From Paramoeba atlantica (Eukaryota > Protista > Discosea), in NCBI GenBank assembly GCA_977017575.1, contig CDRNVI010000032.1, forward strand, positions 248,001 to 312,000: a DNA stretch of 64,000 nucleotides. The letters are read 5' to 3'. A program made the position numbers and the translations under genes. Under the pieces are notes generated by a model, which did not search any database, was not told the origin of the DNA, and was given only the letters and a program-made list of their open reading frames with translations. Below are positions 15,815 to 47,351 of this stretch, one piece after another (the first letter of the stretch is position 1; each line of letters opens with the position of its first letter).

Positions 15815-15975
15815 AGATGCATTCTAAAAATGCAATCAAGACAGTATTTTCCCACCATGTTGCTTTTTCACAACTCTACTTGAACAACCCCAAATTTCTA
15901 GAACGCTACCGACGTGAAAGAACCATCATACCTTGTACATCAAACCCCTGACCCCCCCCCCCTTCCCCCTTTTCT

Positions 15976-17349
15976 TCATTGCCCCACCAACGCTCCCCCC
16001 ATCGTCTCCTCCACCCCCTTATACCCCCTCACCACCCCCTCCACCACCTCTCTCGAACTCACAAACTCCTCCATCCCCTCCCGAAACATGGCATGTTTTT
16101 TATAATTCTCCAAAAACACCCCCCGGTGCCACAACTGGTCAAAGTGCCGCAGCATACGCTGCAGCACCCCGCCCATCCCGGTGTGGTTCCCCAGCATGAG
16201 CCCCCGTACCCTGTAGGGGGAGTCCACGAAAGGGCTCGGTGGACTCACCCCGACGTGGAGGGATCCGGGAACCCAGGGGACAAAGCCGGGGGGGTTGGTG
16301 GCTTTGATCCGGGAGATCGCATTGGAAATCTCCAACGCCTCCACCTCACCTTGGAGGAGATGAACCATCCCGGTGTAGGCTCCGGAGGGGTTGGTGTGAC
16401 GGGAGGGGTTGCCTGCCATGTGGTTGGCTGGGGAGAGCACACGTCGGATAATATCCTGTACGGAAGTTTTTTGAATCCCCGGGGGGTGGTTGGGTTTACC
16501 CAGGTGGAGGGGGGCGTAGCTGGGGATAAGGAAATGACAGGGGGGGAGGGGGACGAGGGTGGCGAGGAGACTCCAGAGGTCAGTGGGGACTACCCCCGGG
16601 AAACGGAGGGGAGCGGTGGTGGCGGCCATTACGGTGGAGACGATGCGGTTCATTTCGTCGACTTTGGGGGCGGTAAGGTGGAGGACTTCGGTGGCGATGC
16701 GGTTGAGGGCGGTGTTGTCGAGGACGATTACCCCGTCGGCGTGTTGGGTGAGACGTTTGAGGGTGAGGATACTGTTGTAGGGCTGTACGATGACGTCCGA
16801 CTCCCCGGTTTTGCTGTGGTTGGGAAACACGCTGTAGGTTTGTACAAGTCTTTTCGGGTAGCGCTCTGAGATTTGTTCTAGGAGATAGGATCCGAGACCA
16901 CTGCCGGTACCCCCGGCAATACTGTGTGTGAGGAGAAAACCCTCGAAGTTGTCTGTGTTTTCAGCCTCGCGATCGATCATGTCAAATAGGTGTTCGGAGA
17001 CGGTATCGGCCAATTCGTAACCGGTTGCCCAGTTGTTTCCGGCACCACCCCCTTCTGGGTGAATATAAATATTCTCTGGATTAAACAGAGCTCCAAGAGA
17101 ACTGCGTTGCACGCCGTGAATTACCCTGGGCTCTAAATCTAGAAGAATAGCACGAGGAATATAATGGTTGTCGTCCGCGGGATAAAAGAAAATCTCTTTG
17201 TGATCAATCACCATATCTGTATTAGATGGGCTTGGCATCGGCATACCATCTGGACCGATGCCGTGCTCCAGGCACAGTTGACGCCAAAACTCGGAACCAA
17301 TTTGATTTCCACATTGGCCACATTGAAGTGTGAGAAGCTCGCGCGGCAT
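15976..17349 (-). CDS. TUBG: Gamma-tubulin
   Basis: [63 protein letters not shown]. Confidence 0.97.
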
Positions 17350-17545
17350 TCGCGACAGCTATGGGTATTCTATAACTTTTTTATTCACTATTCTATAGTT
17401 TATTCTAATTTTATAGTTTATGGTAAGGCTAAGAAATAAAATCTGAGTTTTTTTGGCGCCTTTGATGTACCCTTCAAAATGTTTTTTATGTTTCTGAATA
17501 AAAAATACCAAAAACATAAGAAATCAATGAACATAAAGGAAACAC

Positions 17546-20500
17546 TTACCCGACTTCTTCATCCGAATCCGCTTTTGCATTCTCTTTCGCGGGTATAGAA
17601 TGATGATTTGAATTTGACGTCGTGGTTGGGCGAGCGCACTGCTTTGAAGAGGAAGGACGCTTTGGCCATAACACGCAAGCTCCATCCGGGAGGCACTGCA
17701 AGTGGTATGTAATCCAGTCCACCAATAAGAACCTTGTCGGCAGTGTGGAGTGACCTCCTTCCTCGGAATCTTTTATGTCGCCACTTCTTTTGATCGGTGG
17801 AGTAAGTTTGCTGTCCGCTGGACTTTGCACAATTCCTTGATTAACTGCGTTCCAAGATGTCTTGTCAAAGAGCACATGTGTGTACTGAAGACACTGGGAC
17901 TTGCTGGATATCTCCTGTACGTGATGAACTTGCTGCGCACCGCCGGAATGCAAAATTCGAAGATAGGACTCTGTGCAGGGCCCCGTTGCGCACACTAACA
18001 AACGACACCCGTGAAACGCAAGTTGCCCCGTTTTTTCTCTACGCTCTCGCCATGTTTTGCAGGCATCAGCCAGATGTAAAGTGGCACAGCGCGCCTTAAG
18101 TCCTACTTTGCTTCTGGTCCACTCGTAGTTTGCTTCCTGTAGCCATGTCATGTGACGCGCACAATCATCAAGAAAAACGGGACGGAGAACCCATATGCCA
18201 CGTGCGAGAGCAGTTAGAACAGATTCTCGTTGACTAGGATCTGTGCAGATAAGGTGAGTCGCCGTAGAGATGTCATCAGAATCAACAGAAGCTCCCAGTT
18301 TTTGCATTGCATCGCGAAGTATGACCACATGAGAGTGATCATAGGAAAGTAAACTGAAGACCAACCTTCGATTTTGAGCTGATTTCACAGAATCGAAAGA
18401 CTTGATTTCACTTTGAACAGGATCCAAACTTTGTTTCCGTTCAATCGAGTTGCATCTATTTTCCGATTTTGTTGGAGAATTGACATTTGTTGTCGATATT
18501 TCTCGTGAAGGAGAAAAACGCAGCATTCTTGCCGCTTCGGGTGAGGGGGTGACTTTCAATTCTTCATTTCCAGAGGGATCATTAAATGGTGGTGAATGGG
18601 TTTGATCCTGTGATTGATAGTCAGCAGGAGCTAAAGTGGCATCGTCTTCCTTGGAGTCAGTACCTTTTCTTTCCAAGCTGTGCACTATTGGGTCGCTCCT
18701 GGGCTCAGCGCAAGGTACATGATCATTTGAAGTGAAGTTTTGCTGTTTTTTCGCACCTATTCCAGTTGTCTGTCCTTCGTACTGCGGAAAATTTTCTCCA
18801 ACGGTGGTTTGGTGTACGGCTTCGTCCCAGCGATCTTCAATGGGGGAGTCGTCGGGTGGAGCAGGTGGGGGAATTCCATCGGCGTACTCTCTCACAAAGT
18901 AACCCGCACGCGCACTGCGCTCGATCCAGGATGGATCCACCACTAGAGGACGTCTCACTGAGCTGTCTGCCGTCGCGCGAACCACATGGGAAGCCCCGGC
19001 GGGACTATCCCAGATCATTCCCCCGAGGGCTGTAATAGCCATGCGTATGGGAGTAAGTTCTGTACTCAGTTCCCGATCAATGTGTATGATAATTGTGCCG
19101 GAGTACATGGACGGGGGTGGTGACGCTCGTCGCGGTCTTGGCATAATAGGCTCAAAGTACCATATCCATGAAATGGAACACGACGCGGTATTAATGTCAT
19201 GCTCATTAAGACCATTCGCGGATGCAACCTTATCGTTTTGAACCGATAATCCCCCAGGGGCACAGCTTTTCCGCTCGACACACATTTCAACCCACGTGGA
19301 AGTTACTTTAAGCGGAGCACCAGTGGAAGAACGCTGTGTGACATCTGAAGGAGTACCCAAAGGAGAGTTTGCTTCTAAAAAAGATACCCAAGGAGGAGTT
19401 GGCTGAATCGCTATGCTTGGCGAAAAATTTGAATGAGGCATCAAGCGTTCATGTGAATGTGGAACGACATGACAGGATGGTACTGCCTTTTCCGAGGACA
19501 AGCTAAGCACTCGCCCTCCATGTTTCATAACAAGGTTTTCGAGTTCTTGCAGTCTTTCATGAACAAATTCGTAAGAAAAAGTAAAAGAAACTCCGAGAAA
19601 CGTTTCTGATTCCATCAGAATCTCGTCTTGTGATTCTTTAGAGGGTTTCCCGCCTTCCGACCACGTGCTTTCGTTCAGAGCTTCATTTTTTCGAGTTTTC
19701 ACACCATCGTGTGAAGCAGAGATAATAGGCATCTCGACGAGAGGACTGACAGACACCTCCTTTTCGCTTGTTGTTGAAGGAAGTGACCTGTGGCGCGCAT
19801 CAGCTTCCGAAGTATCAGCCTTGGAAGAAATATCTACTTGGTTAAAAGGGTAGACGTACATATCAGAAAAACCTTCTTTTCGGTTTAAGAGACTGTCTAC
19901 TATCCAGCGACTCGTGACAACACGACTTAAGGGTATACAATACCGAGAAAGCAGTGTGCGCAAGGAATCTTCCACGTGAGAGGAAAGCCGAGTTTGTGTT
20001 TCTGAATGAACAATAACGATATGTGTACAGAGTGGTAAAAGACATGGTGTAATGACTGAGCCAGCAAGTATACCACCTCGACGTAGTAAAAAGAAATTTC
20101 GTTCTAATGAGTGCAGTATACTTGAAATCTGTTCCCTAGCGTCTCCATGGAGATGTGATGGACTGTAGGACTGTAATATGGTCATGATATCCGTTGCAGA
20201 CCATGTATTTAAACCCACATCGGGCTGCGTGCTTTGAGTTTTAACATCGGAAGAAAAAGGTACGGCATCCACTCGAGGTGTTGAACTCTGAATTTCAGTT
20301 GCCACAGTACTTAAGAAGTACGTGACGCATCCTGAGAGAAAAGGCGTACTCGAAAATGTTGTCAAAGCATCGAATAATTTTTCCAAAAGATTAGTAGTCA
20401 AACGTTTAAAGTGTGAGGCGTGTTGCTCAAAGTGTGGCACCATGTTACTCTTCGCATGGGTGGTACGAAACTCTTCATACAACGCTCGACGTGCATCAGC

Positions 20501-21352
20501 TTCCTGGAAATTTTTCCTCGCGTTTTCTTTGAGAAGCACACCGCAGTATTCTTGCGCCTCGTCGTAGCTGAAAGGCTCAATAATTTCCAAAGAGGTAGTC
20601 CCAGTTTCCTTTGAAATTCCAGATAATTTTACCGGCGTCTTGCTTGAGGAGCGCTTCGAAGACTCAATTCTAGGTTTTTTAATATCAGTTTCTAAATCTC
20701 CAGCCAAATCATAAAATGGGGTGGCTCTACATATATCCGTAATTTCACATTCGACGACAAGTCCACTTTGCAGAGCAACGAGCCAACAATCATGTACAAC
20801 CGAAATGTTGTGACGCTCAGCAAATACAACCTTGGCATTTTTCTCTTTCATTCGCCAGTTGAAGTCTCGATCAACAAGCAAATGAGACACATTGACCGTC
20901 AAATGACCTTGATAAATTCCCCCTAGATCGCGAACCTTGTCAGCAAGTAAAGCTCTGGAAGAGGGGCTGTGTCCCGTAACACAAATGCAATATCCAGTAA
21001 GAGGCTTAACACTAAAATTGGACGATAAATCAGGTTTTGGCGGAGAAATATGGGTGTGTTCGGGGTGTTCCTGACCACCTAGGGACATTGGTCTTTGTGC
21101 CACACTAAGTCCAAGGATCCTATTGCAACGAATAGACTCGCGCACCCATGTCTCCGCAACAAGAGCAACATTACCCAACTGCCGCGCCGCAACACATTTT
21201 TTTGTCGACCCCCGATTCGCCACGATATGCGTTAGGTCGGTAGCGGCGTCGGCAGAAAAGTTTCCACCCCGTGATTCTACTAACTCCCGTAATTCAGATC
21301 TTTTATTTATCGAGAAGCCTGATGAAGTAAACCGAAGCCCAGAGAACAACAT
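17546..21352 (-). CDS. Multi-BRCT protein, TopBP1/Dpb11-like
   Basis: N-terminal tandem BRCTs (VESRGGNF...THIV...K...W; LGGIYQGHLT.NVSHLL...W), a central BRCT and a C-terminal pair (KLGASV...ATHLIC...LARGIWVLRP.FL). Confidence 0.75.
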   Translation of the reverse strand: MLFSGLRFTSSGFSINKRSELRELVESRGGNFSADAATDLTHIVANRGSTKKCVAARQLGNVALVAETWVRESIRCNRILGLSVAQRPMSLGGQEHPEHTHISPPKPDLSSNFSVKPLTGYCICVTGHSPSSRALLADKVRDLGGIYQGHLTVNVSHLLVDRDFNWRMKEKNAKVVFAERHNISVVHDCWLVALQSGLVVECEITDICRATPFYDLAGDLETDIKKPRIESSKRSSSKTPVKLSGISKETGTTSLEIIEPFSYDEAQEYCGVLLKENARKNFQEADARRALYEEFRTTHAKSNMVPHFEQHASHFKRLTTNLLEKLFDALTTFSSTPFLSGCVTYFLSTVATEIQSSTPRVDAVPFSSDVKTQSTQPDVGLNTWSATDIMTILQSYSPSHLHGDAREQISSILHSLERNFFLLRRGGILAGSVITPCLLPLCTHIVIVHSETQTRLSSHVEDSLRTLLSRYCIPLSRVVTSRWIVDSLLNRKEGFSDMYVYPFNQVDISSKADTSEADARHRSLPSTTSEKEVSVSPLVEMPIISASHDGVKTRKNEALNESTWSEGGKPSKESQDEILMESETFLGVSFTFSYEFVHERLQELENLVMKHGGRVLSLSSEKAVPSCHVVPHSHERLMPHSNFSPSIAIQPTPPWVSFLEANSPLGTPSDVTQRSSTGAPLKVTSTWVEMCVERKSCAPGGLSVQNDKVASANGLNEHDINTASCSISWIWYFEPIMPRPRRASPPPSMYSGTIIIHIDRELSTELTPIRMAITALGGMIWDSPAGASHVVRATADSSVRRPLVVDPSWIERSARAGYFVREYADGIPPPAPPDDSPIEDRWDEAVHQTTVGENFPQYEGQTTGIGAKKQQNFTSNDHVPCAEPRSDPIVHSLERKGTDSKEDDATLAPADYQSQDQTHSPPFNDPSGNEELKVTPSPEAARMLRFSPSREISTTNVNSPTKSENRCNSIERKQSLDPVQSEIKSFDSVKSAQNRRLVFSLLSYDHSHVVILRDAMQKLGASVDSDDISTATHLICTDPSQRESVLTALARGIWVLRPVFLDDCARHMTWLQEANYEWTRSKVGLKARCATLHLADACKTWRERREKTGQLAFHGCRLLVCATGPCTESYLRILHSGGAQQVHHVQEISSKSQCLQYTHVLFDKTSWNAVNQGIVQSPADSKLTPPIKRSGDIKDSEEGGHSTLPTRFLLVDWITYHLQCLPDGACVLWPKRPSSSKQCARPTTTSNSNHHSIPAKENAKADSDEEVG

Positions 21353-21565
21353 ATGTATTTTAAGATATTTTCATAACAGATAGATAAAATATTACCAGTG
21401 TTAGATTTTTGTGGCTAAACAAAGAAGGAAAAGCAATTACAAACAAAAAAGGTACAGTGCGCCATACAACAAGATACACCATCAATAATTTCGTGCGACA
21501 GAATGTGGATACATGCACGGCATGTGTAGTGACATTTCCAAAGACAAGACTCGGCTTTCAAGCAG

Positions 21566-22024
21566 CTAAGCAGTGTGCCTGATTGTTGGTTCAGTTAAAG
21601 AAGCGCCCAATTCTAAAATAGGCTGTAAAATATTTTCCCGGTTAGTTTCCACAATCTTTCCGTCCACAACCATTTCATTAAGAATAAGATACGCCTTCTC
21701 TAGGTGAAGCATCAGATCAAGCTCACAAACATTATCAAAATACTGATCAAACGTCTCCACCATGCAGTGAATAAATTCTAGAACAGCAAGTTCGTTTTCT
21801 TCTTCGTCAACACCAACGATAAAAAACAATGAAGCATACCTCCGGTATATGAGCTTGTGACCCAAGTGCTCTAAAAAGTTACAGTGTGATTCTTTTCGCT
21901 GTAGGCATTTACGTACTACTTCGCCCTCTAGTGCTGAACGCTCTGAAATAGGAACCCATTTCGTGTAATGTGCCAGGCGAGTTTGTCCGTGCTTGTTGAC
22001 CAACAGAACGAAAAGAATAGTCAT
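21566..22024 (-). CDS. AP4S1: AP-4 complex sigma subunit
   Basis: LLVNKHGQTRLAHY, LEGEVVRKCL.R, IYRRYASLFFIVGVD.EENELA.LEFIH..VET.D.YF.NVCELD. Confidence 0.9.
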   Translation of the reverse strand: MTILFVLLVNKHGQTRLAHYTKWVPISERSALEGEVVRKCLQRKESHCNFLEHLGHKLIYRRYASLFFIVGVDEEENELAVLEFIHCMVETFDQYFDNVCELDLMLHLEKAYLILNEMVVDGKIVETNRENILQPILELGASLTEPTIRHTA

Positions 22025-22552
22025 GTAAAGTTATGTGAGGACTATACAAATACGGCATAGATGATAAACTTTTCGGACAATCAACGGCATAGACGTTTCA
22101 ACTTAGATGAAGTACATGTATATCTCTCAACAACTAAGAGGGCGCACTGCATATTTAATACAGGGGATACAGTATGTTCTTGTGAGAACCTTTCCTACTT
22201 GGTCAAAAGGATATTCGTCCGAAAACTGGCACTTACCTAAAAGTAAAAGTTCGAGCTATTCAATAATGCTTATTCCGACCTCAAATCCAGAAAAAATCCC
22301 ATGACTGGAGCCTATGTGTTACTGTAGCACATAGACAGCGTTTGTGGAAATATACGTGTACATGGCTGACAACTCGATGCTCTGTCCAAGAATTTGCTAA
22401 GAAAGTCTGGTTGTCATGGAGAGATACTGTATTCCATATATGCCGGATATGGAATCCAGAATGTATCACACATGTAATGTAAGTCCAGAGGAGAGTGTTG
22501 CCTTCTGAACCCATTGCGAGGAGTTGGGTCGCACTGTTCATGGTGTCTGTAC

Positions 22553-24865
22553 TTAGAGGATATTCAAAAGCGCGTGATCCTCATTAATTGCATAGGTTTC
22601 GGACAGCAACGAATCATGTGGTGAATCAGATTCGTTAATGCGAAAGGGATATGCTCCCGGATATTTTTCAAAATGTTTCCGAATGTCTTCATACGAATTT
22701 GATTCCACAATGCAAATGCCTTGTGCTCCAGAAGTTTTCGGCAAAGAAGATAATATGTCTCTACAGTGTTGCGCTATATGACCTTTTCGAGAAAGTATAT
22801 AAACCTCGCATTCGGGATTTAAGTCGTGAATCATATTAGCAATAGCAAGAAGCCTCATTGCAGTCCCGTGTCCACGAGATTTGGTAAAACCAGGCTCCTT
22901 CATACTCAAAGCTTGCTCCACCGGTTTCGTATTCTCTTTTTCGTATTTGCCTTTGTGACTTTGACACAATGTCCTTGTGTCACTGAGTGACGCACTAGAG
23001 GTAGAAAAACTTGAAGGCCGAATTCCAAAATCACTTTTTGAAGCAGTGTCCCTTAATCCAAGCAGAACACGTTCATTTTTTTCTTTCGGTGCACAGACGC
23101 GCTGTGACGATCGAAATCCTTCGAAAAGATTCTCAGTAAACGATGATAATTTCTGGGAATGTCCGTAAAAATGCCTATGAGCACGAAGCTGATCAATGAA
23201 CGACATTATATAAAGCTTTTTGTTTAGTTTACCGTGATTTTTTTGAGATAGAACTTTCATCTGACGAGAGTACGTCTCGCTCTCTTTATTCAAATGCAGT
23301 TTTTTTGCCTTTTCATGCAAGCAGAAAAGATTTCGCACGTGTGTATACGGTACGAGCAAAGTATCAAAAATGGAGCCCAGTTCTCTTGCATTTAACTCAG
23401 GACTTACATAGAGGTGTGAGTCGAGAACAGCGACTCGTCCTTCGACTATAATACGCTTGTGTTCAGAACCAAAAACACAGATGCCAGATGTAATCATTGG
23501 AATTGCTGGGGCGAGATACTCCTGCAATTGTATAGCGACGTACAGTGCCGCGTCCGCATCTTTCATCTTAAGAAGAACATCAAGAATTGCTTCATAAAGA
23601 GTACTAAGTGAAAGTTCATTGCTCTGCACGCATTCTAAAAGACTACGTTGTCGTATTCGCATGAAAAATTCCATTGCCTCATTAATTCTTGGAGGGATGA
23701 TCTCATTCTTCGTAACCAAGTTAGTATCTGCAGAAGAACGACAGAGCATTGCATAGAGCATAGCGTAAAGCAATGATCGCGGGGCTGTAATTTTATGATC
23801 ACATGCCAGGCGAAGAATACTCGACAGTTTAGATATGTCTGTACGACAACAAGAAACAAGAATGTCAAGCGTCTCTGGTGTAAGCACGCGGTGCTTCAAT
23901 GATTGTTCTACTCCATGAGATACCAGAGAAAACGCCTTTCGCCAGTGACCCCCCGATGCTACAATCTCTAGACATGCATTACGCATCGATGTTGAACGAT
24001 CCACTGATGGAACGGCATTGTAGAGCTTGAGGGCTCTGATCAAGAGTTCATGCCTTATCCAATTTTGGTCAGCTGTACTAGAAGGAGTGCAAAATTCTTG
24101 ACGTCGGTCTTGCTGAGATACTCGCAAACCGATTTCATGAAGGCTACGATTGATTACATGAAAAATTTCAGCTACTAGATGGGCGTCACCACTTTTGGCA
24201 TCCTGAAGTTCTGTGCCTTCCTCTTCGTATGAGTAAGTTGGGTTTGATGTAGTCAACGATCTGCACTTTGAATGCTCCTGATAGGCAAGCACCTGTAAAC
24301 TTAAATTCAGAGCATACGATAACGCAGTTTTCCATGGTGCGTGATTTCGAAGCGCTACTAGGGAAGAGTGCTGCGCTTGCACATTGGCTCTGCCGAGCTC
24401 GGATTCCATTTCCGAGAGAACACTGAGCACTTCTTGCCAAAGTCCAGCGCAGCGATACGCACCAATGAGTGCAGTATAATGATGTGAGCTAATCACGTTT
24501 TTCGGATTATTCGTTAAAATATTCCAATATTCAAGTGCCCATTTCCATTCGCCTCTCGAAACAACTGAGGTCATGAGTGTTCCTAAGTGCAGACTGTTTA
24601 GCACTCTCCCGTATTCATCTGACCACAGGTCAGCAATTTGTTTGCATTTGCTAATTTGATTTTTTTTTCGAAGGTAAATAAAAATGCCATGAAGGACTTT
24701 CTGAGTAAGCTCACCACTTGAAACAGCGCGCTGCATAATAGAGCTCACATCGGAAACGGAGCAAGCACTAAGTGCGTGGGAAAGAGGCAGTCTACGAACA
24801 CCTAACTTATGGTGCGCGAATATTTTGGTAGGTACCGCTCCTTTAAGAATTCCTTGGCGAACCAT
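22553..24865 (-). CDS. Pentatricopeptide-repeat protein with degenerate PIN-like C-terminal domain, probably mitochondrial
   Basis: PPR motifs (HYTALIGAYRCAGLWQEVLSVLSEM; NACLEIVASGGHWRKAFSLV); AVLDSH...LLVPYTHVRNL...RLLAIANM...EVYILSR resembles a PIN fold. Confidence 0.7.
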   Translation of the reverse strand: MVRQGILKGAVPTKIFAHHKLGVRRLPLSHALSACSVSDVSSIMQRAVSSGELTQKVLHGIFIYLRKKNQISKCKQIADLWSDEYGRVLNSLHLGTLMTSVVSRGEWKWALEYWNILTNNPKNVISSHHYTALIGAYRCAGLWQEVLSVLSEMESELGRANVQAQHSSLVALRNHAPWKTALSYALNLSLQVLAYQEHSKCRSLTTSNPTYSYEEEGTELQDAKSGDAHLVAEIFHVINRSLHEIGLRVSQQDRRQEFCTPSSTADQNWIRHELLIRALKLYNAVPSVDRSTSMRNACLEIVASGGHWRKAFSLVSHGVEQSLKHRVLTPETLDILVSCCRTDISKLSSILRLACDHKITAPRSLLYAMLYAMLCRSSADTNLVTKNEIIPPRINEAMEFFMRIRQRSLLECVQSNELSLSTLYEAILDVLLKMKDADAALYVAIQLQEYLAPAIPMITSGICVFGSEHKRIIVEGRVAVLDSHLYVSPELNARELGSIFDTLLVPYTHVRNLFCLHEKAKKLHLNKESETYSRQMKVLSQKNHGKLNKKLYIMSFIDQLRAHRHFYGHSQKLSSFTENLFEGFRSSQRVCAPKEKNERVLLGLRDTASKSDFGIRPSSFSTSSASLSDTRTLCQSHKGKYEKENTKPVEQALSMKEPGFTKSRGHGTAMRLLAIANMIHDLNPECEVYILSRKGHIAQHCRDILSSLPKTSGAQGICIVESNSYEDIRKHFEKYPGAYPFRINESDSPHDSLLSETYAINEDHALLNIL

Positions 24866-37202: not shown

Positions 37203-37403
37203 TTAATAAATGTTCTTGCATCTTAGAGGGTGTTCCAAAACACCTGTGCATGGAGTCGAGCGACCGTCAATCTCTGTTTTGAGGTGATACCAGAGATTCC
37301 CAGTGGGATTGTGATGCGGAGGCCACCCCAGAAGCGTAAACGACTCATTAGCAAAGAAGATTTTGTCATTTGGGGTTAAGAGATTGCTCGACTGACGACA
37401 GAA
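37203..37403 (-). pseudogene. Highly deleted Tc1-like transposase relic
   Basis: Stop-to-stop frame reads FCRQSSNLLTPNDKIFFANESFTLLGWPPHHNPTGNLWYHLKTEI, i.e. the IFSDESxF motif fused to WPP..NPIENLW..LK. Confidence 0.55.
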
Positions 37404-37458
37404 TTAGGTTAGAAACTCTCAAGGTACGAAAGTAGTTAAGAAATAAAGCTTCTGCACC

Positions 37459-38463: not shown

Positions 38464-38727
38464 TGATAAAGGCCCAAAGAATATACTTCATCGGGAATTC
38501 ATATAAGCCAAGGACGTAACCATGATATTATATCAACAAAATAGAATTCTTATTTTTAATTGACTTCAATGAATTGAATTCGAGCAAAATATCGTGACGA
38601 AATGAAACTTGCACCAAAAAGGGACCAAAATCAAGCAAAAATGAACGATAATTTCATTAAACGGCTACAGGCATGTCCTTTTTCAAATTGATTTGATCGT
38701 TTTAGAAGTTAGACTGTATTAGCGAAA

Positions 38728-39519: not shown

Positions 39520-39936
39520 TTTATATTGACGAACAATATTCTATCCTTTTAATATCCATGTGGCTAGATAACATTCTTACCCTTATTACTTGTAAGTAAT
39601 ACTTATTACTTGTAAGTGCATGCAAGGGGCTGCGGGGGAGGTCCAAACGATACCACGCGAGATTGCGTGAGATCACCCGCAGCCTCTCATGTGTATCGTA
39701 AATCTTTATAACTTGAACATGTATATTCGTGCGCAGAGTTTATATAATTTGCGTTGATGAACTAAGTTGAAGGAATCTCTGCTAACGGAATATTAACGTT
39801 ACCAAAGATAAATATGACTTAGTTTTTGTGTCTGAAATAGATAGATACCTTAAGGAATGTCTCTCCCCAGACACTAATCAAAAGACAGTAAACTAGAATA
39901 GAGTACGATGAGTGTTTCCCATCGAGTACAGTAAAC

Positions 39937-40962
39937 TCATGCGGAAATCGTTTCCCATGCGGAACCCATATTTACTTTCAGAAGTTCCGCTCCCGGACTT
40001 TCCAAATAACTTTTGTCAAATACATGAACGCGCACCATACCGTCCTCTCCCCCCGTTGTGAAGCCTCTCCCTAAAGGATGGAAAGCAACCGCGTTAATTG
40101 GAGAGAAATGCTCACAAATTCCACCTAAATATTTTCCAGTGACTTTATGACAAAACCGGGACTCAAAATGACTCCCCCGAATATTTGTCACACTCTGGGC
40201 ATCCTCCCCGCCACCCAACAACACATGATGTGCCTGAGGCGCCAGATCCGCATCCAGCACGTGTTTCCCCTTTTCGTGCTCATACGTTTGTATCACCTCC
40301 AACGTACGAGAATCAAGCAATTTCGCCGTGGAATCCGCCCCACATGACAACAACGTTGAATACTCTGCATCCCACTTCAATCGGTACGCTATGCCATTAT
40401 GAATTTGAGCTTTACGAACAACCTGCCCCGTGGAGGTATCCGCAACCCCGACCATCCCATCCTCACAGGCGAAATACACCGACTCGTTTGTCGGGCCAAA
40501 CCGTGCGCTACGAATCACACTCTCACTCTCGATCCGTAACGCCGGGACGTACTCCCCTTTCCAAGTTACGGGATCGGGAGGGAGATGAAACAGATTCACT
40601 GCGGGGGTTTGACGAAATTGGGCATTCGTAACCGCCAGCAGGTGGGTGTCCCCGTGACTGAGTTCAACCGCCTTCACGGCGGTGGGCATCTCAACAGCTG
40701 CGACGGACTCCCCGGTAGAGACGCTCCAGAGCCGCCAGTGTTGGTCTCCCCCTCCGGTGGCGAGGAGCGTGGAGGTGTAGTTGACGGCACAGCACCACAC
40801 CGCACCCTTGTGGCCGCGGTAGGACCCGAGCAGGGCTCCGGTGGTGGGGGACCAGACCAGGGGGACGTTGTCCAGGGCGGTGGTGAACAGGAGGTCGCCC
40901 TCGGGGTTGTAGGTGAGGGATTGGATGGATTTGGAGTGTCCGTGGAGGACAAACGTTTTCAT
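39937..40962 (-). CDS. EIF3I: Translation initiation factor eIF3 subunit I (WD40)
   Basis: MK..VLHGH.K....L.YN.EGDLLF, HFSPINAVAFHP.G..F.TGGEDG.VR.H.FD..Y. Confidence 0.92.
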   Translation of the reverse strand: MKTFVLHGHSKSIQSLTYNPEGDLLFTTALDNVPLVWSPTTGALLGSYRGHKGAVWCCAVNYTSTLLATGGGDQHWRLWSVSTGESVAAVEMPTAVKAVELSHGDTHLLAVTNAQFRQTPAVNLFHLPPDPVTWKGEYVPALRIESESVIRSARFGPTNESVYFACEDGMVGVADTSTGQVVRKAQIHNGIAYRLKWDAEYSTLLSCGADSTAKLLDSRTLEVIQTYEHEKGKHVLDADLAPQAHHVLLGGGEDAQSVTNIRGSHFESRFCHKVTGKYLGGICEHFSPINAVAFHPLGRGFTTGGEDGMVRVHVFDKSYLESPGAELLKVNMGSAWETISA

Positions 40963-41262
40963 TGGGGGGCGGGATAAGGAGGAGGAGGAAGGATAATACA
41001 GAAAAAATGAAAGGAAATGTATTTTTGAAAGGGTTTTGGAGGATCATAAGTACGAAAATATTGATAAGGAATCGACAAAAGGGAATAGATAAACAGTGTC
41101 TCGGCTTCTCTGGTACAATACAGGCGTACTGTACTGTAGGGATAGTGAAAACAAAACATAATTCGTGTTCGTAATTCTCAATTGTAAATTCGATACTAAA
41201 TATAATGAAAGCGATATTGCTACACCGAGATCTCCCAGCAATGTCGGCAATTCGAGTTCGAA

Positions 41263-42027
41263 TTAGGAAAGCCCGAACTCATCCGCCATATCGTCAGAAA
41301 TGTCGCTGTCATCATCCACTTCGTAATTACTCCCCGAATCATCGGTGCTCATATCGCTTTCCTCCTCCTCTTCAGAATCACTTGTCGTTTCTGATGACAA
41401 TTCCTCCACACGATCTCCCGAGGGGCTTTTCTCCCATCTGGCCTTCGAACGGCCCTCCTCCTGCATGTTCTGAAGAACCTCATCGATCGGCATTTCGGCT
41501 TCTGCCATCATACGTCTTTTCAAATCCTCCCAGTCCTCACCTACCGCAAACTGCTCTTCATCCTCGGAAGTCTCATCCGAGACGTCATGCCCTGTCGGAG
41601 GCTCGCAAGTGTCGCCGTCACCCCACTTCAGTCCGGACTCCACCAACAGCTCCTCCCAGAAGTGTCGTAATTCCAGAGCCTTCTTGAACTCTTCCCCGGA
41701 TTCGGGGTAATACGCGACGGCGTTGATAAAAACACGATCAACGTCCGTAATAAACTCAGAATGAGAGGCATAGCCTTCCTCGCTAACAATCCGGTCCGCA
41801 ATCACAGAGAAATCGATAGGGTGTTCCACATAAGAGCGGTATTCAGGATGCAAATTGTCATCCACGGGCTTTGAAAACCGTTTATCCGGATCTTGTTGCT
41901 CCAGGCGCTGAAGCAAGTCGCAGTGCAACCGGCGGTCTCCTTGGAGTGCAGAGTTCGAAACTAACGAGGAACCAGTATCCTTTTCGGAAGCCTCTCTCAC
42001 TCGTTTCGTAGGATGTGTTTGGGTCAT
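41263..42027 (-). CDS. Bromodomain protein with acidic C-terminus
   Basis: FSKPVD....PEY...VEHPIDF..I..R....Y.....F..DV..VF.NA..Y. Confidence 0.85.
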   Translation of the reverse strand: MTQTHPTKRVREASEKDTGSSLVSNSALQGDRRLHCDLLQRLEQQDPDKRFSKPVDDNLHPEYRSYVEHPIDFSVIADRIVSEEGYASHSEFITDVDRVFINAVAYYPESGEEFKKALELRHFWEELLVESGLKWGDGDTCEPPTGHDVSDETSEDEEQFAVGEDWEDLKRRMMAEAEMPIDEVLQNMQEEGRSKARWEKSPSGDRVEELSSETTSDSEEEEESDMSTDDSGSNYEVDDDSDISDDMADEFGLS

Positions 42028-42573
42028 TCAAGTATCGAACACAGAAATGTAGGAGACTGTAACGAAAGAAAATCTAAATATTAAACTGATAAAAAAATGA
42101 ATACCCTAGCTTTGGCCTCGGTTACCAAAGCCTGATGGGCAATTACCCCGTGTAACCGTACTTTAACCGTTATCCATGGAGCCGAGGAGATTAAAATGCC
42201 GCATTCTCATGGTCTTGTATGATACCAGTTTGATCCTTACTCGTAACCTCCCTCTCTTACGCTTATAGAAACTTGTACAACGCAGCATAAAAATGCACTA
42301 CAATTCATAGTTCCTTTGATAATAAGTGAGTGGTTGGTATTTATTGTAAAGACACTTTTGTTATGAGTTGTACTATAAATAATAATCGTATGACACGTTC
42401 TCTTTCGTACGTATGCATTAAATTGATATAAAACAAAATATGTGTAGCAATTTTCTGACTTCGAAACATTATGAATTCATGGACGATTAGCTTAAATACC
42501 TATTTAAAAAAGTATTTTCCTGACAAGCACATAGATAATAAGAAATAAGCGTTTTTATCAAGACTTTCCCTTT

Positions 42574-44502
42574 TTACCTCGATCGACGAGTTCCCAAGGA
42601 CATTTTCCCAGTATACAAATGTTTAGGTTTCAGTGTAGGGACGCTACGGTCGGCCTCACCCTTACGTCCTTGATTGGACCACTTACGCGAGTCTCGACGT
42701 GACAATGACACGGCACGCATTTTTTGTGACACGTCTTTGTACCCTTCCCCTCGTCTGACGCTCATAGATCGGTCTGCAGAACGATTCCGAGAAGATAATG
42801 AGCGAGTACGACCTGTGCTGAGATGCGCGCTAGATGCCCTTTCCTTCTCTAGCGCTTGCTCAGCTCGAGTGCTACGCCCTCTCTTTTGAACCTCCTTGCC
42901 ACTCGGGTTCTGCCCACCAATGTTTTCCCGCTGTTTTTCTATTGCTGCTTTCATTTGTTTGGATTTAGGAGCAGATGATGAGCGTGTCTTTTCAACCGCT
43001 CGTTCCATTTTTCGGATAGCAATTTTCGAGCGAATAATTTGTACTGCCAGTTTCGCCTTGGAATCTACTTTGGTCAATTTCTTAGTAGATTCTTCCTCTT
43101 TCTCCTTTTGCAGCTGATTTTCTTCTTCGATCTCAAGTTGGATAAGCTGTTCTTCGATGTCAGGGTCAATAAAATCTTGAATATTCATTCCATCCATAAT
43201 TTCAGGAACGACATCATCTTTCCAGACCTCCTCTTTCAAAATATAATGCTTACTTAACTTCGGAAAATACACCCCAGGTCCACCATTTTCTGCTTCATAA
43301 TCTTTCTCGGTCTTCATGGGTGGAGGTGCTCCGCTTTTTCTCTCTTCCACCACGGATTCGGGAATATATGCGGGACGGTCAATGTTGTCTCTACGCTTTG
43401 GCAGTGCGCAATATAAACGATTTTGAAGGGTACCCTCCTTGGCTCGAAGTTGCTTTTCACCCATTCTTGCACGAAGCAACTGTTCGCATGCCATGACCTT
43501 AAGGTCTCCAACCGCATCGTCTCTCAGCGTGCTTGTTTCAATTGTTTGCACATTAGGGCCGGTATTCTGAAGCATCTGTTCAAGCATCGCCTTCTCCTGC
43601 GGTGCAAGTTGGTCGCGCCGACAAAGATCAGATTTGTTAAATACAATGACAAGTGGTTTCCCAGCAAACAAAGGCTGGATGTTGTGAAAAAGTGAACACT
43701 GAGCCTCTACAGAATAACCACATTGCGCAGAGAGATCCATAAAGTACAACACAGTGGCTTGTAAATGAGCCAGCGCAGTGATAGATTGCATTTCAATCAC
43801 ATTGCGTTCATCCAAGGAGTGATCTAGAATCCCAGGAGTGTCGATTACTTGCCAAGGCATGTAGTTATACTCCGTATGCCCGACGTAGAGCGATTTTGTG
43901 GTAAAAGCATACGGTTGAACCTCTACATCAGCGCGACTAACCTTATTCAGAAAACTAGACTTTCCCACATTAGGAAACCCACAGATCAAAAGTGTGCGAG
44001 TGTTTGGATCAATTGCAGGGAGACGGGATAAATGCTGGCGCACTTGCTCCAAGTAGGACAGTGTAGGCCCCAACTTTTTCAACACTGTAGCCATACGTCC
44101 CAGTGCAGCTCTCTTTACCTGTTTACAACGGTACATGGAGTCCCCATACTTCAGCAAACGGACGTAATCCCGACAGATAACCCCTACAATGTGTCGTACA
44201 GATGAGATTTGCCCCAGCGCGACTTTGTAGTGATCCTTATCGTAAAGCACATTCATCAAGTCGGAATAAAAAGGGTGTACGTCATCCATTTTAGGAAACT
44301 CTTCCAAGATTTTTGTGAGCCGCTCATGTATCGTTTGTTGCGTAAATTTGACTTTTCGGAGATAAAATTTACGAATCCGGGCAATTTCATAGTTCCTATG
44401 TATCACAGTAGGAGTTTTGCGCTGAGTTTTGCTAAGCACGATATCTACTAAATCCTGGGAAGAACTTGGTATAGGCGTAATACCTTTGAAGTTGTAGGCC
44501 AT
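42574..44502 (-). CDS. NOG1: Nucleolar GTP-binding protein 1
   Basis: LSKTQRKTPTVIH, GFPNVGKSS, VQPYAFTTKSLYVGH, DTPGILDH, KPKHLYTGK..LG...R. Confidence 0.97.
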   Translation of the reverse strand: MAYNFKGITPIPSSSQDLVDIVLSKTQRKTPTVIHRNYEIARIRKFYLRKVKFTQQTIHERLTKILEEFPKMDDVHPFYSDLMNVLYDKDHYKVALGQISSVRHIVGVICRDYVRLLKYGDSMYRCKQVKRAALGRMATVLKKLGPTLSYLEQVRQHLSRLPAIDPNTRTLLICGFPNVGKSSFLNKVSRADVEVQPYAFTTKSLYVGHTEYNYMPWQVIDTPGILDHSLDERNVIEMQSITALAHLQATVLYFMDLSAQCGYSVEAQCSLFHNIQPLFAGKPLVIVFNKSDLCRRDQLAPQEKAMLEQMLQNTGPNVQTIETSTLRDDAVGDLKVMACEQLLRARMGEKQLRAKEGTLQNRLYCALPKRRDNIDRPAYIPESVVEERKSGAPPPMKTEKDYEAENGGPGVYFPKLSKHYILKEEVWKDDVVPEIMDGMNIQDFIDPDIEEQLIQLEIEEENQLQKEKEEESTKKLTKVDSKAKLAVQIIRSKIAIRKMERAVEKTRSSSAPKSKQMKAAIEKQRENIGGQNPSGKEVQKRGRSTRAEQALEKERASSAHLSTGRTRSLSSRNRSADRSMSVRRGEGYKDVSQKMRAVSLSRRDSRKWSNQGRKGEADRSVPTLKPKHLYTGKMSLGTRRSR

Positions 44503-44794
44503 GAATTGAGATAAAGAGAAAAAAATTCAGAAAAGTAGTTATTCAGAGTGACGTGATGTTTTCTATAAGAAATTCATTGATACGATATTCGTCACTGATA
44601 TGCTAGATACAGTAAAATTTTATTCGTGGTCAGTCGGCAAGGATTTCACCATTATAAATTGCAATGCCACAGAAAGACCCCGAAAATCAAAATATCAGGA
44701 TGATATGAATTATCGTTTGTGAAAGAATATAAACAAAATTACGTTGCACATTTTAATCATGTACAAATCATGTGTGCAATTGAAAACACAGAAG

Positions 44795-46069
44795 CTATAA
44801 AGGTGCTTCACTCTTGCTTGAGCCACTCGAAGGGCTTACGACGATGCTTGGAGAAGTGGAGCTTTCCGAATTGGAAGGTGTGCCACTATTGTTCTCCGAA
44901 GCGATTCGAGTGTCTTCCGTCTCCTCCTCAGATAAACAAGTATTGCTGCTTCGCCCAGCATAGCTATTCATTACCTCCACAGAGCATCCCATGCCTTTGG
45001 GAGGCTTTGTTAAAGGAAAGCGTCGATGAAACTTTATGGATTCCTCTACGATTGCACGCTTTACGTCTCGTATTGTTGCATAGTCAGACTCTCGAAAAGC
45101 GAAGGGTACCACTTGAACTTGTGTGTCTGACTCGTCGTAAAGCTCCGTAAAATATGGATGTTTAAGGGCTTGATCAACTGTAATACGATTCTTTGGGTGA
45201 AATTTAAGAAGTTTCTCTAACAGATCCACGGCAAGCGGATTCGCCTGAGGATAGCGTTCCGTGAAATCCACCGGATTGCGACTTGATTTTCGCATCACGT
45301 AGCGTTGTGCCGCGGTACTTCCCAGACTCAAAACCTCCTCCTCGGGAGGGGTTCCAGTGATGTCCAATATCTTATCCAGTTGGTTGACTCGATCCTTTCC
45401 CGGGAAGAGCGGTTTGGAGCCCAACAGCTCGCCTAAGATACAGCCTACTCCCCAGACGTCGACTTGAGCGTCATAGTGCCGGTGTTCCATTACCAGATCA
45501 GGGGCTCTGTACCATCGCATGGTGACGTAGTCCGTGCGTTCCGCCCCTTCCGTCTCCTCCTTGGCAAGCCCAAAGTCACAAATCTTCAAGTCGCAGTTCG
45601 TGTTGACAAGAATGTTAGATGGAGTGACGTCTCGGTGAATCACGCCAGCGCTGTGAATGACCTTTAGCGCCCGCAGGGCTTGGTAGAGAAAAAACTGAAT
45701 GTGGGCATCTGTGAGTTTTTGATTCGACCGCAGTACCTGCTTTAGATCGGTTTCCATCATATCCATCACAAGATAAAACTCCGTGAACTCTTCTGTCGGT
45801 GGGGAGAGAATGTTGCGGATCCCGACAATATTTTCGTCGTGAAAATGGGATAAGAGTTTAATCTCCCGGAGGATGCGTAGAGCAAGAATGGTCTCGGCAA
45901 AAATTTCACTGTTTATTCGTTTGATCGCTACTTGGCAGTTATCTGTGGTGTCACGGGCCCGAATCACCATTCCATAGCTTCCATGTCCTATAATCTTTTC
46001 CAGACGGTAGCGAGGGTCTAGAGCATCAACCTCCTCCTGTAATTCACCCAAGTTTCGTGGGACCGGCAT
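44795..46069 (-). CDS. Mitogen-activated protein kinase (TDY activation motif)
   Basis: IGHGSYGMV, VAIK, HRDVTPSN, DFGLA, TDYVTMRWYRAPDLV; probable start MPVPR at 46069. Confidence 0.93.
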   Translation of the reverse strand: MPVPRNLGELQEEVDALDPRYRLEKIIGHGSYGMVIRARDTTDNCQVAIKRINSEIFAETILALRILREIKLLSHFHDENIVGIRNILSPPTEEFTEFYLVMDMMETDLKQVLRSNQKLTDAHIQFFLYQALRALKVIHSAGVIHRDVTPSNILVNTNCDLKICDFGLAKEETEGAERTDYVTMRWYRAPDLVMEHRHYDAQVDVWGVGCILGELLGSKPLFPGKDRVNQLDKILDITGTPPEEEVLSLGSTAAQRYVMRKSSRNPVDFTERYPQANPLAVDLLEKLLKFHPKNRITVDQALKHPYFTELYDESDTQVQVVPFAFRESDYATIRDVKRAIVEESIKFHRRFPLTKPPKGMGCSVEVMNSYAGRSSNTCLSEEETEDTRIASENNSGTPSNSESSTSPSIVVSPSSGSSKSEAPL

Positions 46070-46282
46070 GTAGTATGGAAATAAAAAAGAAAAAAAAATA
46101 CGGATTGTAAGTTTCCCAAAGCATACCCCACGAAAACACACACACCCCTATCCACTCATGGAATACCCCTATCATCCAAAAAGTTCAAAAGCCAACCTTT
46201 ATCTTCCCCATCTCGAACACACATCTGCCCACCCCCCCTTCTTTCAAAAGCACAAAGCCTTCTCCCAACCCCCCTCTTTCCC

Positions 46283-47044
46283 TCACAACCCCCTCACCAC
46301 CTCCTCCACCTCCCCCTCCCCCAGCACCCTCACCCTCCCCGTCCCCTTCTCCACCACCACCACCTCCACATTCCCCCCCCGCACCCCCTCCTCCATCACC
46401 CCCTGCAGCACCCCCACCGCCAGCGCCACCCCCTCCCCCAGCCCCATCCCCGGGCGGTACCTCTCCGCCAGCACCCCCCGCGCCCCCTCCGCCCCCGCCC
46501 CCACCGCCGCCGCCTCCTCCCGCCAGTACGTCCCGCTGGGGTCCGTGGACCACAGCGAGACCCCCGCCGCGGGGTCCACCCCCCCGACCAGCAGCGCGAC
46601 CCCGTAGGGGCGGGACATCGCGGGGGGGGGGCGGGTCGAGCCCTTGTTGTTGTCCTTCCGGGGTTGGCTCTCCCCGAAGCGGAGCGCGAGGTCGCAGGTG
46701 GCGCGGGTGAGGGACTCGGCGGGGAGGGGCTCGTTGTAGGTGAGGGTGTGGGCGGTGGCGAGGGCGCGGGCGTGGTGGACGAGGGTGTGGGCGTCGGCGG
46801 TCATGCCGGAGACGACGGCGGCGAGGTGGTGGTCGAGGGCCACGATCTTGTGCACGGAGGGGGGGAGGAGGAGGGGGGAGGGGAGGCGACGCTCGGCGGC
46901 GAGGACCACGCCGTCGGGGGTGGTGAGGCCGAGACCGGTGGCGCCGAGGGTGATGGCTTTGCGGGCGTACTCGATTTGGAAGAGCCGGCCCTCGGGGGAG
47001 AAGGTGTTGACCCCGTGGTCGTACTCGGAACGGGCACCGAACAT
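46283..47044 (-). CDS. PSMA5: 20S proteasome subunit alpha-5
   Basis: MF..RSEYD.GVNTFSPEGRLFQIEYA, CDLALRFGE, MSRPYGVALL, TDPSGTY; ATG 47044. Confidence 0.93.
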   Translation of the reverse strand: MFGARSEYDHGVNTFSPEGRLFQIEYARKAITLGATGLGLTTPDGVVLAAERRLPSPLLLPPSVHKIVALDHHLAAVVSGMTADAHTLVHHARALATAHTLTYNEPLPAESLTRATCDLALRFGESQPRKDNNKGSTRPPPAMSRPYGVALLVGGVDPAAGVSLWSTDPSGTYWREEAAAVGAGAEGARGVLAERYRPGMGLGEGVALAVGVLQGVMEEGVRGGNVEVVVVEKGTGRVRVLGEGEVEEVVRGL

Positions 47045-47351
47045 GGAGGGGAGGGAGGGGAGGGAAAAGGAAGAAAGGAGAAGAGGGAAAAGAAAGGGAA
47101 AGAAGGGAGAAATAATGCGCTGGGGAAGGGTTGAGGGAATGTTACTTGATGGTGTACTGTAAGACAAGGTATACCCGTTTTATCCTTTGTCGACAAAGTT
47201 AGAAACGAAGAATAGGAGGAAAAACTCAGAACAGACTCTGTTACTCGGCATCACCTACCTGATATAAAGGCTAATAAAACGAAGCACATGTGTGTTTCAA
47301 GGCGAACCATACTTACACGTAGCTCCCCACGTACCTGTGACGCGATATTCT

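What the first reader, a model, noticed from the sequence alone, without database searches (positions are those of the whole stretch)
15900..47140. Recurrent 1-kb GC-rich islands with mirror-symmetric skew (C-rich left, G-rich right) that overwrite genes
Seen: six islands (about 15.9-16.9, 30.65-31.9, 33.5-34.2, 35.3-36.15, 40.05-41.05, 46.15-47.15 kb) in an AT-rich background. Each switches from C-rich to G-rich on the + strand near its centre. They start and stop inside genes, extend into intergenic DNA, and drive third positions to C on one side and G on the other, so the cause is positional rather than protein-driven. Known: a C-to-G skew switch is the polarity expected at bidirectional replication origins, and local GC enrichment is typical of GC-biased conversion at recombination hotspots. 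Inference: footprints of fixed origins or break hotspots inside a polycistron, or selected G-quadruplex/i-motif or fold-back elements. I know of no description of this pattern in kinetoplastids but cannot search. Boundaries were judged by eye.
Basis: partly seen in the sequence, partly recalled or inferred. Interest (0 to 1): 0.85.

Follow-up and report, generated by a model that had tools for sequence, protein, structure and literature searches.

The report
Bipolar C-to-G skew GC islands
Six 1-kb stretches in a kinetoplastid gene array are GC-rich, always C-rich on the left and G-rich on the right, and this local DNA-level force has rewritten the codons and many conserved amino acids of essential genes, which probably marks fixed sites of DNA breakage/recombination or replication start.

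Summary
Six islands of about 1.1-1.4 kb reach 55-75% GC against a 41-43% background. Each switches from C-rich to G-rich on the + strand, at about 16211, 31300-31440, 33832, 35802, 40562 and 46603. These are the only strong C-to-G flips in the 64 kb. Every strong G-to-C flip is just an island edge.

The bias peaks at silent sites. Proteasome alpha-5 has GC3 of 0.97-1.00, with C3 0.84 changing to G3 0.94. The bias also runs into untranslated DNA. Protein divergence doubles inside the gamma-tubulin island.

The islands are not repeats, not true palindromes and not assembly errors. They are absent from the orthologous genes examined in Perkinsela (syntenic) and Bodo.

The cause is positional and has two-fold symmetry. 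My best reading (about 0.4) is fixed recombination/break hotspots with GC-biased, strand-asymmetric repair. Replication-initiation mutagenesis (0.2) and divergent transcription with R-loops (0.12) share the polarity and are not excluded. Selected G4 or fold-back elements are disfavoured.

First-stage notes report the same pattern on many other pieces of this genome; none of those was followed up. I found no published description.

The parts
15880..17008 (.). Island 1. Flip at 16211-16213. It covers the 3' two-thirds of gamma-tubulin (CDS 15976-17349, minus strand) and about 100 bp of its 3' UTR.
   Evidence: C3 reaches 0.78, then G3 0.78. Identity to other kinetoplastid gamma-tubulins falls to 0.3-0.5 inside the island, against 0.65-0.73 among the others.
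30493..31897 (.). Island 2, bipartite. The C-rich arm is 30.6-31.2 kb and the G-rich arm 31.45-31.9 kb. The middle is AT-rich and encodes a lysine-rich stretch. Flip at about 31300-31442. It covers the ORF 30516-31883 (minus strand, no Pfam match).
33061..34292 (.). Island 3. Flip at 33832-33861. It covers the 5' part of ORF 32943-34061 (minus strand, no Pfam match) and 230 bp upstream of it.
   Evidence: The upstream non-coding part has G .42 and C .10.
35100..36213 (.). Island 4, the weakest. Flip at about 35802 (support 35745-35940). It covers the 3' half of a photolyase/cryptochrome gene (35316-37049, minus strand).
39859..41146 (.). Island 5. The cumulative-skew minimum is at 40562, with a second step near 40840. 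It covers eIF3 subunit I (39937-40962, minus strand) and upstream DNA.
45957..47218 (.). Island 6, the strongest. Flip at 46603-46607. It covers all of proteasome alpha-5 (46283-47044, minus strand) and both UTRs. A 10-residue insertion encoded by a G10 run lies at the flip.
   Evidence: Contigs of separate runs confirm it.
1246..62747 (-). Context: a single-orientation gene array (polycistron-like), with all recognisable cellular genes on the minus strand. Part of it is syntenic with Perkinsela (emp24, proteasome alpha-5, bromodomain, eIF3i, LRR).

Best explanation
Each island is the accumulated compositional footprint of a fixed, nearly point-like site where a two-fold symmetric DNA transaction recurs.

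Most likely the site is a recurrent double-strand break or recombination-initiation hotspot, meiotic or mitotic. Repair there is GC-biased and also strand-asymmetric.

On each side of the break, the 3'-tailed strand and the resynthesised or donor-copied strand are treated differently. A/T positions therefore turn mostly into C on one strand to the left of the site and mostly into G on that same strand to the right.

The bias behaves like a transmission drive. This lets it push third positions to about 100% GC and fix many amino-acid changes in conserved proteins.

What is shown: the geometry, the sign invariance, the silent-site and non-coding maximum, the protein rewriting, and the absence from the orthologous genes examined in two relatives.

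What is inferred: that the transaction is break repair or gene conversion, and the repair rule. My suggested rule is that an A or T lying opposite G in heteroduplex DNA is excised and replaced by C, while other mismatches are mostly restored. That rule would favour both C and G over A/T, and one of them more, with the observed polarity.
For: 1. The islands have rotational symmetry and are independent of transcription direction. All genes are on the minus strand, yet both strands read C-rich then G-rich.

2. The half-width is about 500-600 bp, with skew greatest at 200-300 bp from a sharp centre. From my own knowledge, that is the scale of resection and conversion tracts.

3. There are two components at fourfold sites. 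Relative to A+T, both S bases rise, by about 2.2x and 6.4x (from the counts). That fits a symmetric AT-to-GC bias plus a strand-specific one.

4. The effect ranks third position above first above second, and is as strong or stronger in UTRs. Even so, conserved residues are replaced directionally: to L/H/A/T/P in the C-rich half and to V/G/R in the G-rich half. Divergence is about doubled. A fixation bias explains this more easily than mutation pressure alone. This is the known behaviour of gBGC hotspots, for example the gerbil genes in PMC6573468 and PMC7403616.

5. Two centres lie only 2 kb apart (33832 and 35802). That is natural for hotspots and awkward for origins or promoters.

6. The orthologous proteasome alpha-5 and eIF3i in syntenic Perkinsela DNA, and gamma-tubulin in Bodo, have flat C3/G3 profiles and no flips. 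The state is therefore derived in this lineage.

7. Weak evidence: in run X1, paired contigs with different letters pile up in 46175-46433, about 6 variants in 260 bp. The adjoining 2.1 kb is a single contig.
Against: There is no direct recombination, break or polymorphism-frequency data.

Classical gBGC is strand-symmetric and has not been reported to give a G-versus-C skew. My literature searches found none. The asymmetric repair rule is my own construction.

If single-stranded DNA damage followed by C insertion opposite the lesion were the cause, the exposed strand would be the G-rich one. That fits origins or R-loops, not 3' tails at a break.

All six centres lie inside coding sequence rather than in the intergenic regions where open chromatin is expected. 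With 79% of the region coding, this is not significant (p about 0.24).

The sexual cycle of this organism is unknown.

The variant cluster in X1 lies in low-complexity DNA and could be noise or paralogy.
Confidence: 0.4

Rival explanations
1. The islands are fixed bidirectional replication initiation sites. Mutagenesis tied to origin firing, or to exposure of the lagging-strand template next to the start site, enriches G on the strand that is the leading-strand sequence on each side and raises GC locally.
For: The C-to-G polarity is that of skew jumps at origins. Human constitutive origins show a local GC rise and base-composition skews at about kb scale, attributed to initiation-coupled mutagenesis (PMC9645720). 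The centre is sharp and the pattern is symmetric. If lesions on exposed single strands are bypassed by inserting C, the exposed strand becomes G-rich, which matches this geometry (inference).
Against: The skew dies out within about 600 bp instead of persisting along the replicon. There is no reproducible A/T skew flip. The amplitude (G3 0.94-0.97, GC3 1.0) and the fixation of changes at conserved residues are far beyond the effects reported at origins. Two centres are 2 kb apart. [quoted passage not shown]
Confidence: 0.2
2. The islands are internal divergent transcription start sites, or sites prone to R-loops in both directions. They would resemble CpG-island promoters, where the non-template strand downstream of each start becomes G-rich. 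The process could be self-reinforcing, because G-rich RNA makes more stable R-loops.
For: The size (about 1 kb), the GC rise and the polarity match GC-skewed CpG-island promoters and the bidirectional asymmetries that start at CpG islands (PMC3787257, which cites Polak and Arndt 2009). Positive feedback could explain runaway values (inference).
Against: The centres lie inside coding sequences of a one-directional gene array and as close as 2 kb to each other. CpG observed/expected is not raised (0.7-1.15 against 1.03 in background). No RNA evidence could be obtained: the one RNA-like run left no contig on island 6. Sense transcription crosses the right arm with a C-rich non-template strand.
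Confidence: 0.12
3. The islands are selected structural elements. The C-rich and G-rich arms would form G-quadruplexes and i-motifs, or a giant hairpin in DNA or mRNA, serving a chromatin, processing or regulatory role.
For: Eleven of the 13 canonical G4 motifs in the window lie in islands 1, 3 and 6, oriented with the skew. The island-6 transcript is predicted to fold as one long hairpin: -513 kcal/mol, z = -3.3 against shuffles.
Against: Islands 2, 4 and 5 have no canonical G4 motif. The arms are no more complementary to each other than to shuffled arms or to arms of other islands. The hairpin is only about 5% more stable than shuffles of the same composition. Placing such elements inside conserved housekeeping genes damages the proteins, while intergenic DNA is available. 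The orthologous genes examined in two relatives lack them.
Confidence: 0.06
4. Artefact or trivial cause: assembly chimera, contaminant DNA, a repeat family, or bias produced by amino-acid content.
For: None found.
Against: Exact matches in contigs of separate runs. The genes are kinetoplastid orthologues in conserved synteny. The islands share no sequence. The bias is greatest at fourfold sites and in UTRs.
Confidence: 0.01

Closest known systems
GC peaks at stable recombination hotspots, and genes rewritten by GC-biased gene conversion. Examples: gerbil Pdx1 and the ParaHox region (PMC6573468, PMC7403616); mouse Fxy and the GC peaks of dogs and birds (from my own knowledge).
   Same: A GC rise at kb scale, strongest at silent and non-coding sites. 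It cuts through genes and forces GC-rich codons and amino-acid replacements into conserved proteins.
   Different: No mirror-image G-versus-C skew with an invariant sign has been reported for those cases. Here the skew is as prominent as the GC rise. The host is a kinetoplastid with a polycistron-like gene array. Recombination at these sites has not been measured.
Skew jumps and initiation-coupled mutagenesis at replication origins (human constitutive origins, PMC9645720; bacterial origins).
   Same: C-to-G polarity across a point, a local GC rise, and about kb scale in the human case.
   Different: The amplitude here is an order of magnitude larger. The skew is confined to about 600 bp either side. 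There is no consistent A/T skew. The sites lie inside genes and can be 2 kb apart.
[quoted passage not shown]
   Same: Same group of organisms. Strand-specific G-rich features flank a centre.
   Different: [quoted passage not shown] That is the opposite polarity. They are not GC islands.
GC-skewed CpG-island promoters and the bidirectional strand asymmetries that start at CpG islands (PMC3787257).
   Same: GC-rich islands of about 1 kb with G excess on the non-template strand in each outward direction.
   Different: There is no evidence of transcription starts here. The islands sit inside coding sequence of a unidirectional array. There is no CpG enrichment over background.
Strand-coordinated mutation clusters that switch strand at a double-strand break (yeast and cancer genomes; from my own knowledge, not checked here).
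   Same: Two-fold symmetric strand asymmetry centred on a break, at kb scale.
   Different: Those clusters remove C from the 3'-tailed strand. Here that strand would be the C-rich one, so a different chemistry or repair rule is needed.

Membership tests
gBGC recombination-hotspot GC peak | kb-scale GC rise that is strongest at silent and non-coding sites | tested here: met
   GC3 up to 1.00. Fourfold-site S content is about 71% against 37% in background. UTR parts are equally biased.
gBGC recombination-hotspot GC peak | Directional AT-to-GC change relative to relatives, including at constrained sites | tested here: met
   Replacements go towards residues with GC-rich codons, and identity is halved inside the islands. 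This was tested at protein level only. No DNA from a close relative exists for polarised nucleotide spectra.
gBGC recombination-hotspot GC peak | Strand-symmetric bias (G and C favoured equally) | tested here: not met
   Strong bipolar skew: C 52% and then G 53% at fourfold sites.
gBGC recombination-hotspot GC peak | Coincidence with measured recombination or break hotspots, and AT-to-GC alleles at raised frequency | not testable with these tools
   Needs population data, crosses or break mapping.
Replication origin (skew jump) | Skew switches from C-rich to G-rich across the site | tested here: met
   Six of six flips.
Replication origin (skew jump) | Skew persists along the replicon and is accompanied by T-over-A skew | tested here: not met
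   Skew returns to zero by about 600 bp either side. A/T skew is inconsistent between islands.
Replication origin (skew jump) | Nascent strands or ORC binding at the site | not testable with these tools
   No such data are available.
T. brucei SNS-seq origin topology | [quoted passage not shown] | tested here: not met
   The centres are in coding sequence and GC-rich. G4 motifs have the opposite arrangement.
CpG-island-like divergent promoter / R-loop site | GC-rich island of about 1 kb with outward G skew | tested here: met
CpG-island-like divergent promoter / R-loop site | CpG enrichment over the bulk genome | tested here: not met
   Observed/expected is 0.7-1.15 in the islands against 1.03 in background.
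CpG-island-like divergent promoter / R-loop site | Transcription starts or RNA:DNA hybrids at the site | tested here: inconclusive
   Contigs of the one RNA-like run do not cover island 6. Contigs cannot show starts.
G-quadruplex / i-motif / fold-back element | A structure-forming motif present in every member | tested here: not met
   Canonical G4 motifs occur in islands 1, 3 and 6 only.
G-quadruplex / i-motif / fold-back element | Arms complementary beyond what composition gives | tested here: not met
   Scores for own arms fall within the shuffled and cross-island range. The predicted fold is only about 5% more stable than shuffles.
Repeat or mobile element | Sequence shared between copies | tested here: not met
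   Only low-complexity matches were found.

The most novel reading that the evidence does not exclude
The islands are a sequence-readable map of evolutionarily stable, point-like break/recombination-initiation sites in a kinetoplastid. At these sites a previously unrecognised strand-asymmetric form of GC-biased repair has run away, to the point of rewriting essential proteins. The flip would mark the break site to within a few bases.
Probability: 0.35. Interest if true: 0.9.

Novelty: new variant of a known kind. Interest (0 to 1): 0.8.

Why it matters
In kinetoplastids the determinants of recombination and of replication initiation are largely unknown and disputed. These islands would give fixed coordinates, readable from sequence alone, that can be tested directly by break, nascent-strand, R-loop or population mapping.

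They are also an extreme natural case of a non-adaptive DNA-level force overriding selection on essential genes. Proteasome alpha-5 reaches G3 of 0.94-0.97. Gamma-tubulin loses half of its identity to relatives inside the island.

That matters for models of biased gene conversion, for phylogenetics and orthology calling in this lineage, and for gene prediction.

The strand asymmetry, if it comes from repair, would reveal a rule of heteroduplex processing that symmetric GC peaks cannot show.

Tried and rejected
1. Repeat or mobile-element origin. The repeat finder and all-against-all local alignment of the arms gave only low-complexity matches.

2. True palindrome. Own-arm complementarity is no better than shuffled or foreign arms.

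3. A shared motif at the flips. CCCCGTAGGGG-like strings occur at islands 1 and 6 only. There they encode conserved Pro-Tyr residues. No common motif emerged.

4. An A/T skew flip, or a CpG-rich centre as a distinct feature. A/T skew is inconsistent between islands. The CpG density peak at the centre is what composition predicts, with observed/expected about 1.

5. RNA genes. Rfam and tRNA scans were empty.

6. A DNA-level comparison with a close relative. The best protein relatives are only 50-60% identical, so no polarised nucleotide spectra were possible.

7. Read evidence for transcript ends or antisense RNA. Only contigs were served, and the RNA-like run left island 6 uncovered.

8. Organism identification through the protein atlas was uninformative.

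9. Literature. Ten searches found no description of such islands in kinetoplastids or elsewhere. A remembered mouse-hotspot paper on nucleotide skew was not held.
Full report
**Observation**

The window is 43.8% GC. A 500-bp profile shows six peaks of 0.55-0.75 GC. GC skew passes from strongly negative to strongly positive at each.

Using cumulative skew, I placed the flips at 16211, about 31300-31417, 33832, 35802, 40562 and 46603. The skewed arms span 15700-17008, 30493-31897, 33061-34292, 35100-36213, 39859-41146 and 45957-47218.

- Left arms hold C .31-.48 and G .13-.21.
- Right arms hold G .35-.48 and C .125-.22.
- The background is C .206 and G .214.

A flip statistic (right 500 bp minus left 500 bp of G minus C) scores 134-370 at the six centres.

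- They are the only C-to-G flips of 100 or more in 64 kb.
- Every G-to-C flip of that size is an island edge.
- Shuffles of 100-bp blocks give about one flip of each sign.

Pooled over the six islands the profile is symmetric. C peaks at .44 at 200-300 bp to the left, and G peaks at .45 at 200-300 bp to the right. A and T fall about equally. Everything is back to background by about 600 bp.

Change-point fits put the switch within 5 bp for island 6, about 30 bp for islands 2 and 3, and about 90 bp for island 1. Island 4 is weak, and island 5 switches in two steps.

**Context**

All recognisable cellular genes lie on the minus strand, from 1246 to at least 62747.

Genes covered by the islands:
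- gamma-tubulin (15976-17349)
- an unassigned ORF (30516-31883)
- an unassigned ORF (32943-34061)
- a photolyase/cryptochrome (35316-37049)
- eIF3 subunit I (39937-40962)
- proteasome alpha-5 (46283-47044)

Genes between the islands include a BRCT protein, an adaptor small chain, a PPR-like protein, a clostripain-like peptidase, LRR proteins, a DnaJ protein, a bromodomain protein, NOG1, a protein kinase, emp24, MutS and a histone.

The best protein relatives are kinetoplastids at only 50-60% identity: the prokinetoplastid PhM-4, Bodo saltans, Trypanoplasma, Perkinsela and Leishmania. The order emp24, proteasome alpha-5, bromodomain, eIF3i, LRR is shared with Perkinsela. The host is therefore a kinetoplastid without a sequenced close relative in the collections searched.

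**Not protein-driven, not an artefact**

Within each affected gene the third codon position changes most.
- In proteasome alpha-5, GC3 by quarter is 0.90, 0.98, 1.00 and 0.97. C3 is 0.78-0.84 in the first half and G3 is 0.94 in the last quarter.
- At fourfold-degenerate sites pooled over the six genes, the 5' island halves have C 52%, G 19%, A 13% and T 15%. The 3' halves have G 53%, C 18%, A 15% and T 14%. Background genes have C 18%, G 19%, A 28% and T 34.5% (proteasome alpha-5 was one base out of frame in that run, which dilutes its contribution).
- Relative to A+T, both S bases rise, one by about 2.2-fold and the other by about 6.4-fold. There is thus a symmetric and an asymmetric component.
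- Untranslated island DNA is at least as skewed: C .41 with G .08-.09 on the left, and G .42-.45 with C .04-.10 on the right. The upstream pieces must also carry polypyrimidine tracts on the coding strand.

Contigs of three runs match island 6 exactly, so it is not a chimera.

**Consequences for proteins**

In gamma-tubulin, identity to eight kinetoplastid orthologues is 0.6-0.8 outside the island, like the identity among those orthologues. Inside the island it is 0.3-0.5, where the others keep 0.65-0.73.

In proteasome alpha-5, positions where at least six of nine orthologues agree have changed as follows:
- to L, H, A, T and P in the C-rich half;
- to V, G and R in the G-rich half;
- a 10-residue insertion encoded by a G10 run sits exactly at the flip.

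All ORFs remain open.

**Lineage specificity**

Syntenic Perkinsela DNA (20.7 kb, including proteasome alpha-5 and eIF3i), the Bodo saltans gamma-tubulin locus (21 kb) and a metagenomic kinetoplastid locus contain no comparable C-to-G flip. Their C3/G3 profiles are flat. The PhM-4 proteins have normal composition at the affected positions.

The islands are therefore derived in this lineage.

**What the islands are not**

- They share no sequence with each other, and their arms are not specifically complementary.
- Canonical G4 motifs occur in islands 1, 3 and 6 only.
- The island-6 transcript folds into one giant hairpin, but it is only about 5% more stable than shuffles.
- CpG is not enriched beyond composition, and there is no reproducible A/T skew flip.
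- No shared motif marks the flips.
- No RNA family or tRNA is present.

**Mechanism**

The pattern reads the same on both strands and ignores transcription direction. The cause must therefore be a two-fold symmetric transaction at a fixed point. There are three candidates:
1. break repair;
2. bidirectional replication initiation;
3. divergent transcription with R-loops.

All three predict, or can accommodate, the C-to-G polarity.

I prefer recurrent break/recombination hotspots with GC-biased repair (confidence 0.4), for these reasons:
- The scale fits resection and conversion tracts.
- There is a symmetric AT-to-GC component.
- Centres can be 2 kb apart.
- Silent sites are driven to about 100% GC, and many replacements at conserved residues have been fixed. 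That is the known signature of a transmission bias (gerbil cases) rather than of mutation pressure.

The asymmetry needs an added rule. One that works on paper is this: in heteroduplex DNA, an A or T opposite G is excised and replaced by C, while other mismatches are mostly restored. That gives both S bases an advantage, unequal between them, with the observed polarity. This rule is inference only.

Against the recombination reading:
- Classical gBGC is strand-symmetric.
- If the skew came from lesions on exposed single strands being bypassed with C, the exposed strand would be the G-rich one. That points to origins or R-loops.

For comparison:
- Human constitutive origins do show a local GC rise and skews from initiation-coupled mutagenesis, but at far lower amplitude.
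- GC-skewed CpG-island promoters are a formal analogue. However, no transcription starts are known or expected inside coding sequences of such an array.

**Polymorphism hint**

In run X1, paired contigs of different depth cover 46175-46433 with about six differences. The next 2.1 kb is a single contig. This suggests raised heterozygosity in the C-rich arm. It is weak evidence, because the DNA there is low-complexity.

**Earlier notes and literature**

First-stage notes report the same always-C-to-G islands on many other pieces of this genome. None has been followed up, and I could not read those pieces.

Ten literature searches found no description of such islands (see Tried and rejected).

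**Verdict**

This is a real, striking and apparently undescribed compositional landmark. Its mechanism is open, and it can be tested directly.

Noticed in passing
window 46283-47996 and 38728-42027; L001 9241-15590: The gene order emp24, proteasome alpha-5, bromodomain protein, eIF3i, LRR protein is shared with Perkinsela. In the window, a protein kinase (44795-46141) and NOG1 (42574-44502) lie between proteasome alpha-5 and the bromodomain gene.
   Followed up: partly
window 46620-46650: A 10-residue insertion (NNKGSTRPPP) in proteasome alpha-5, absent from nine orthologues, sits exactly at the skew flip. Part of it is encoded by a G10 run.
   Followed up: partly
window 46175-46433: In run X1, pairs of short contigs with different letters and depths (20 against 32) pile up here: 4 substitutions in 113 bp, one indel and one further substitution. 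This may be local heterozygosity in the C-rich arm. The neighbouring 2.1 kb is one contig.
   Followed up: no
window 41250-42000: A C-rich stretch on the + strand (skew -0.3, GC 0.52) with no G-rich partner. It covers the acidic C-terminal tail of the bromodomain protein. It may be protein-driven or a half island.
   Followed up: no
window 25750-26750: A weak GC rise (0.50-0.52) with positive skew only, over the 5' part of a clostripain-like peptidase gene. The weak C-to-G flip score is 74, at 26073. Possibly a faint or decaying island.
   Followed up: no
window 4540-9499: The only stretch with plus-strand ORFs (5445-8692). A first-stage note calls it a nest of pogo, hAT and Tc1 DNA transposons. 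It contains no skew island.
   Followed up: no
window 61000-64000: GC of 0.45-0.58 with sustained positive skew up to the window end. A core histone gene lies at 62217-62747 (minus strand). This could be the right-hand arm of an island, or a compositional domain cut off by the window.
   Followed up: no
window 46200-47100 (minus strand): The proteasome alpha-5 mRNA is predicted to fold as one giant hairpin that pairs its C-rich 5' half with its G-rich 3' half and buries the start codon (-513 kcal/mol). This would be a possible cost to translation.
   Followed up: partly
window 43462, 43897, 45032, 45044: Contigs of an RNA-like run from 2015 differ from the window at four sites in about 2 kb. 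A second strain, about 0.2% diverged, therefore exists in public data.
   Followed up: no
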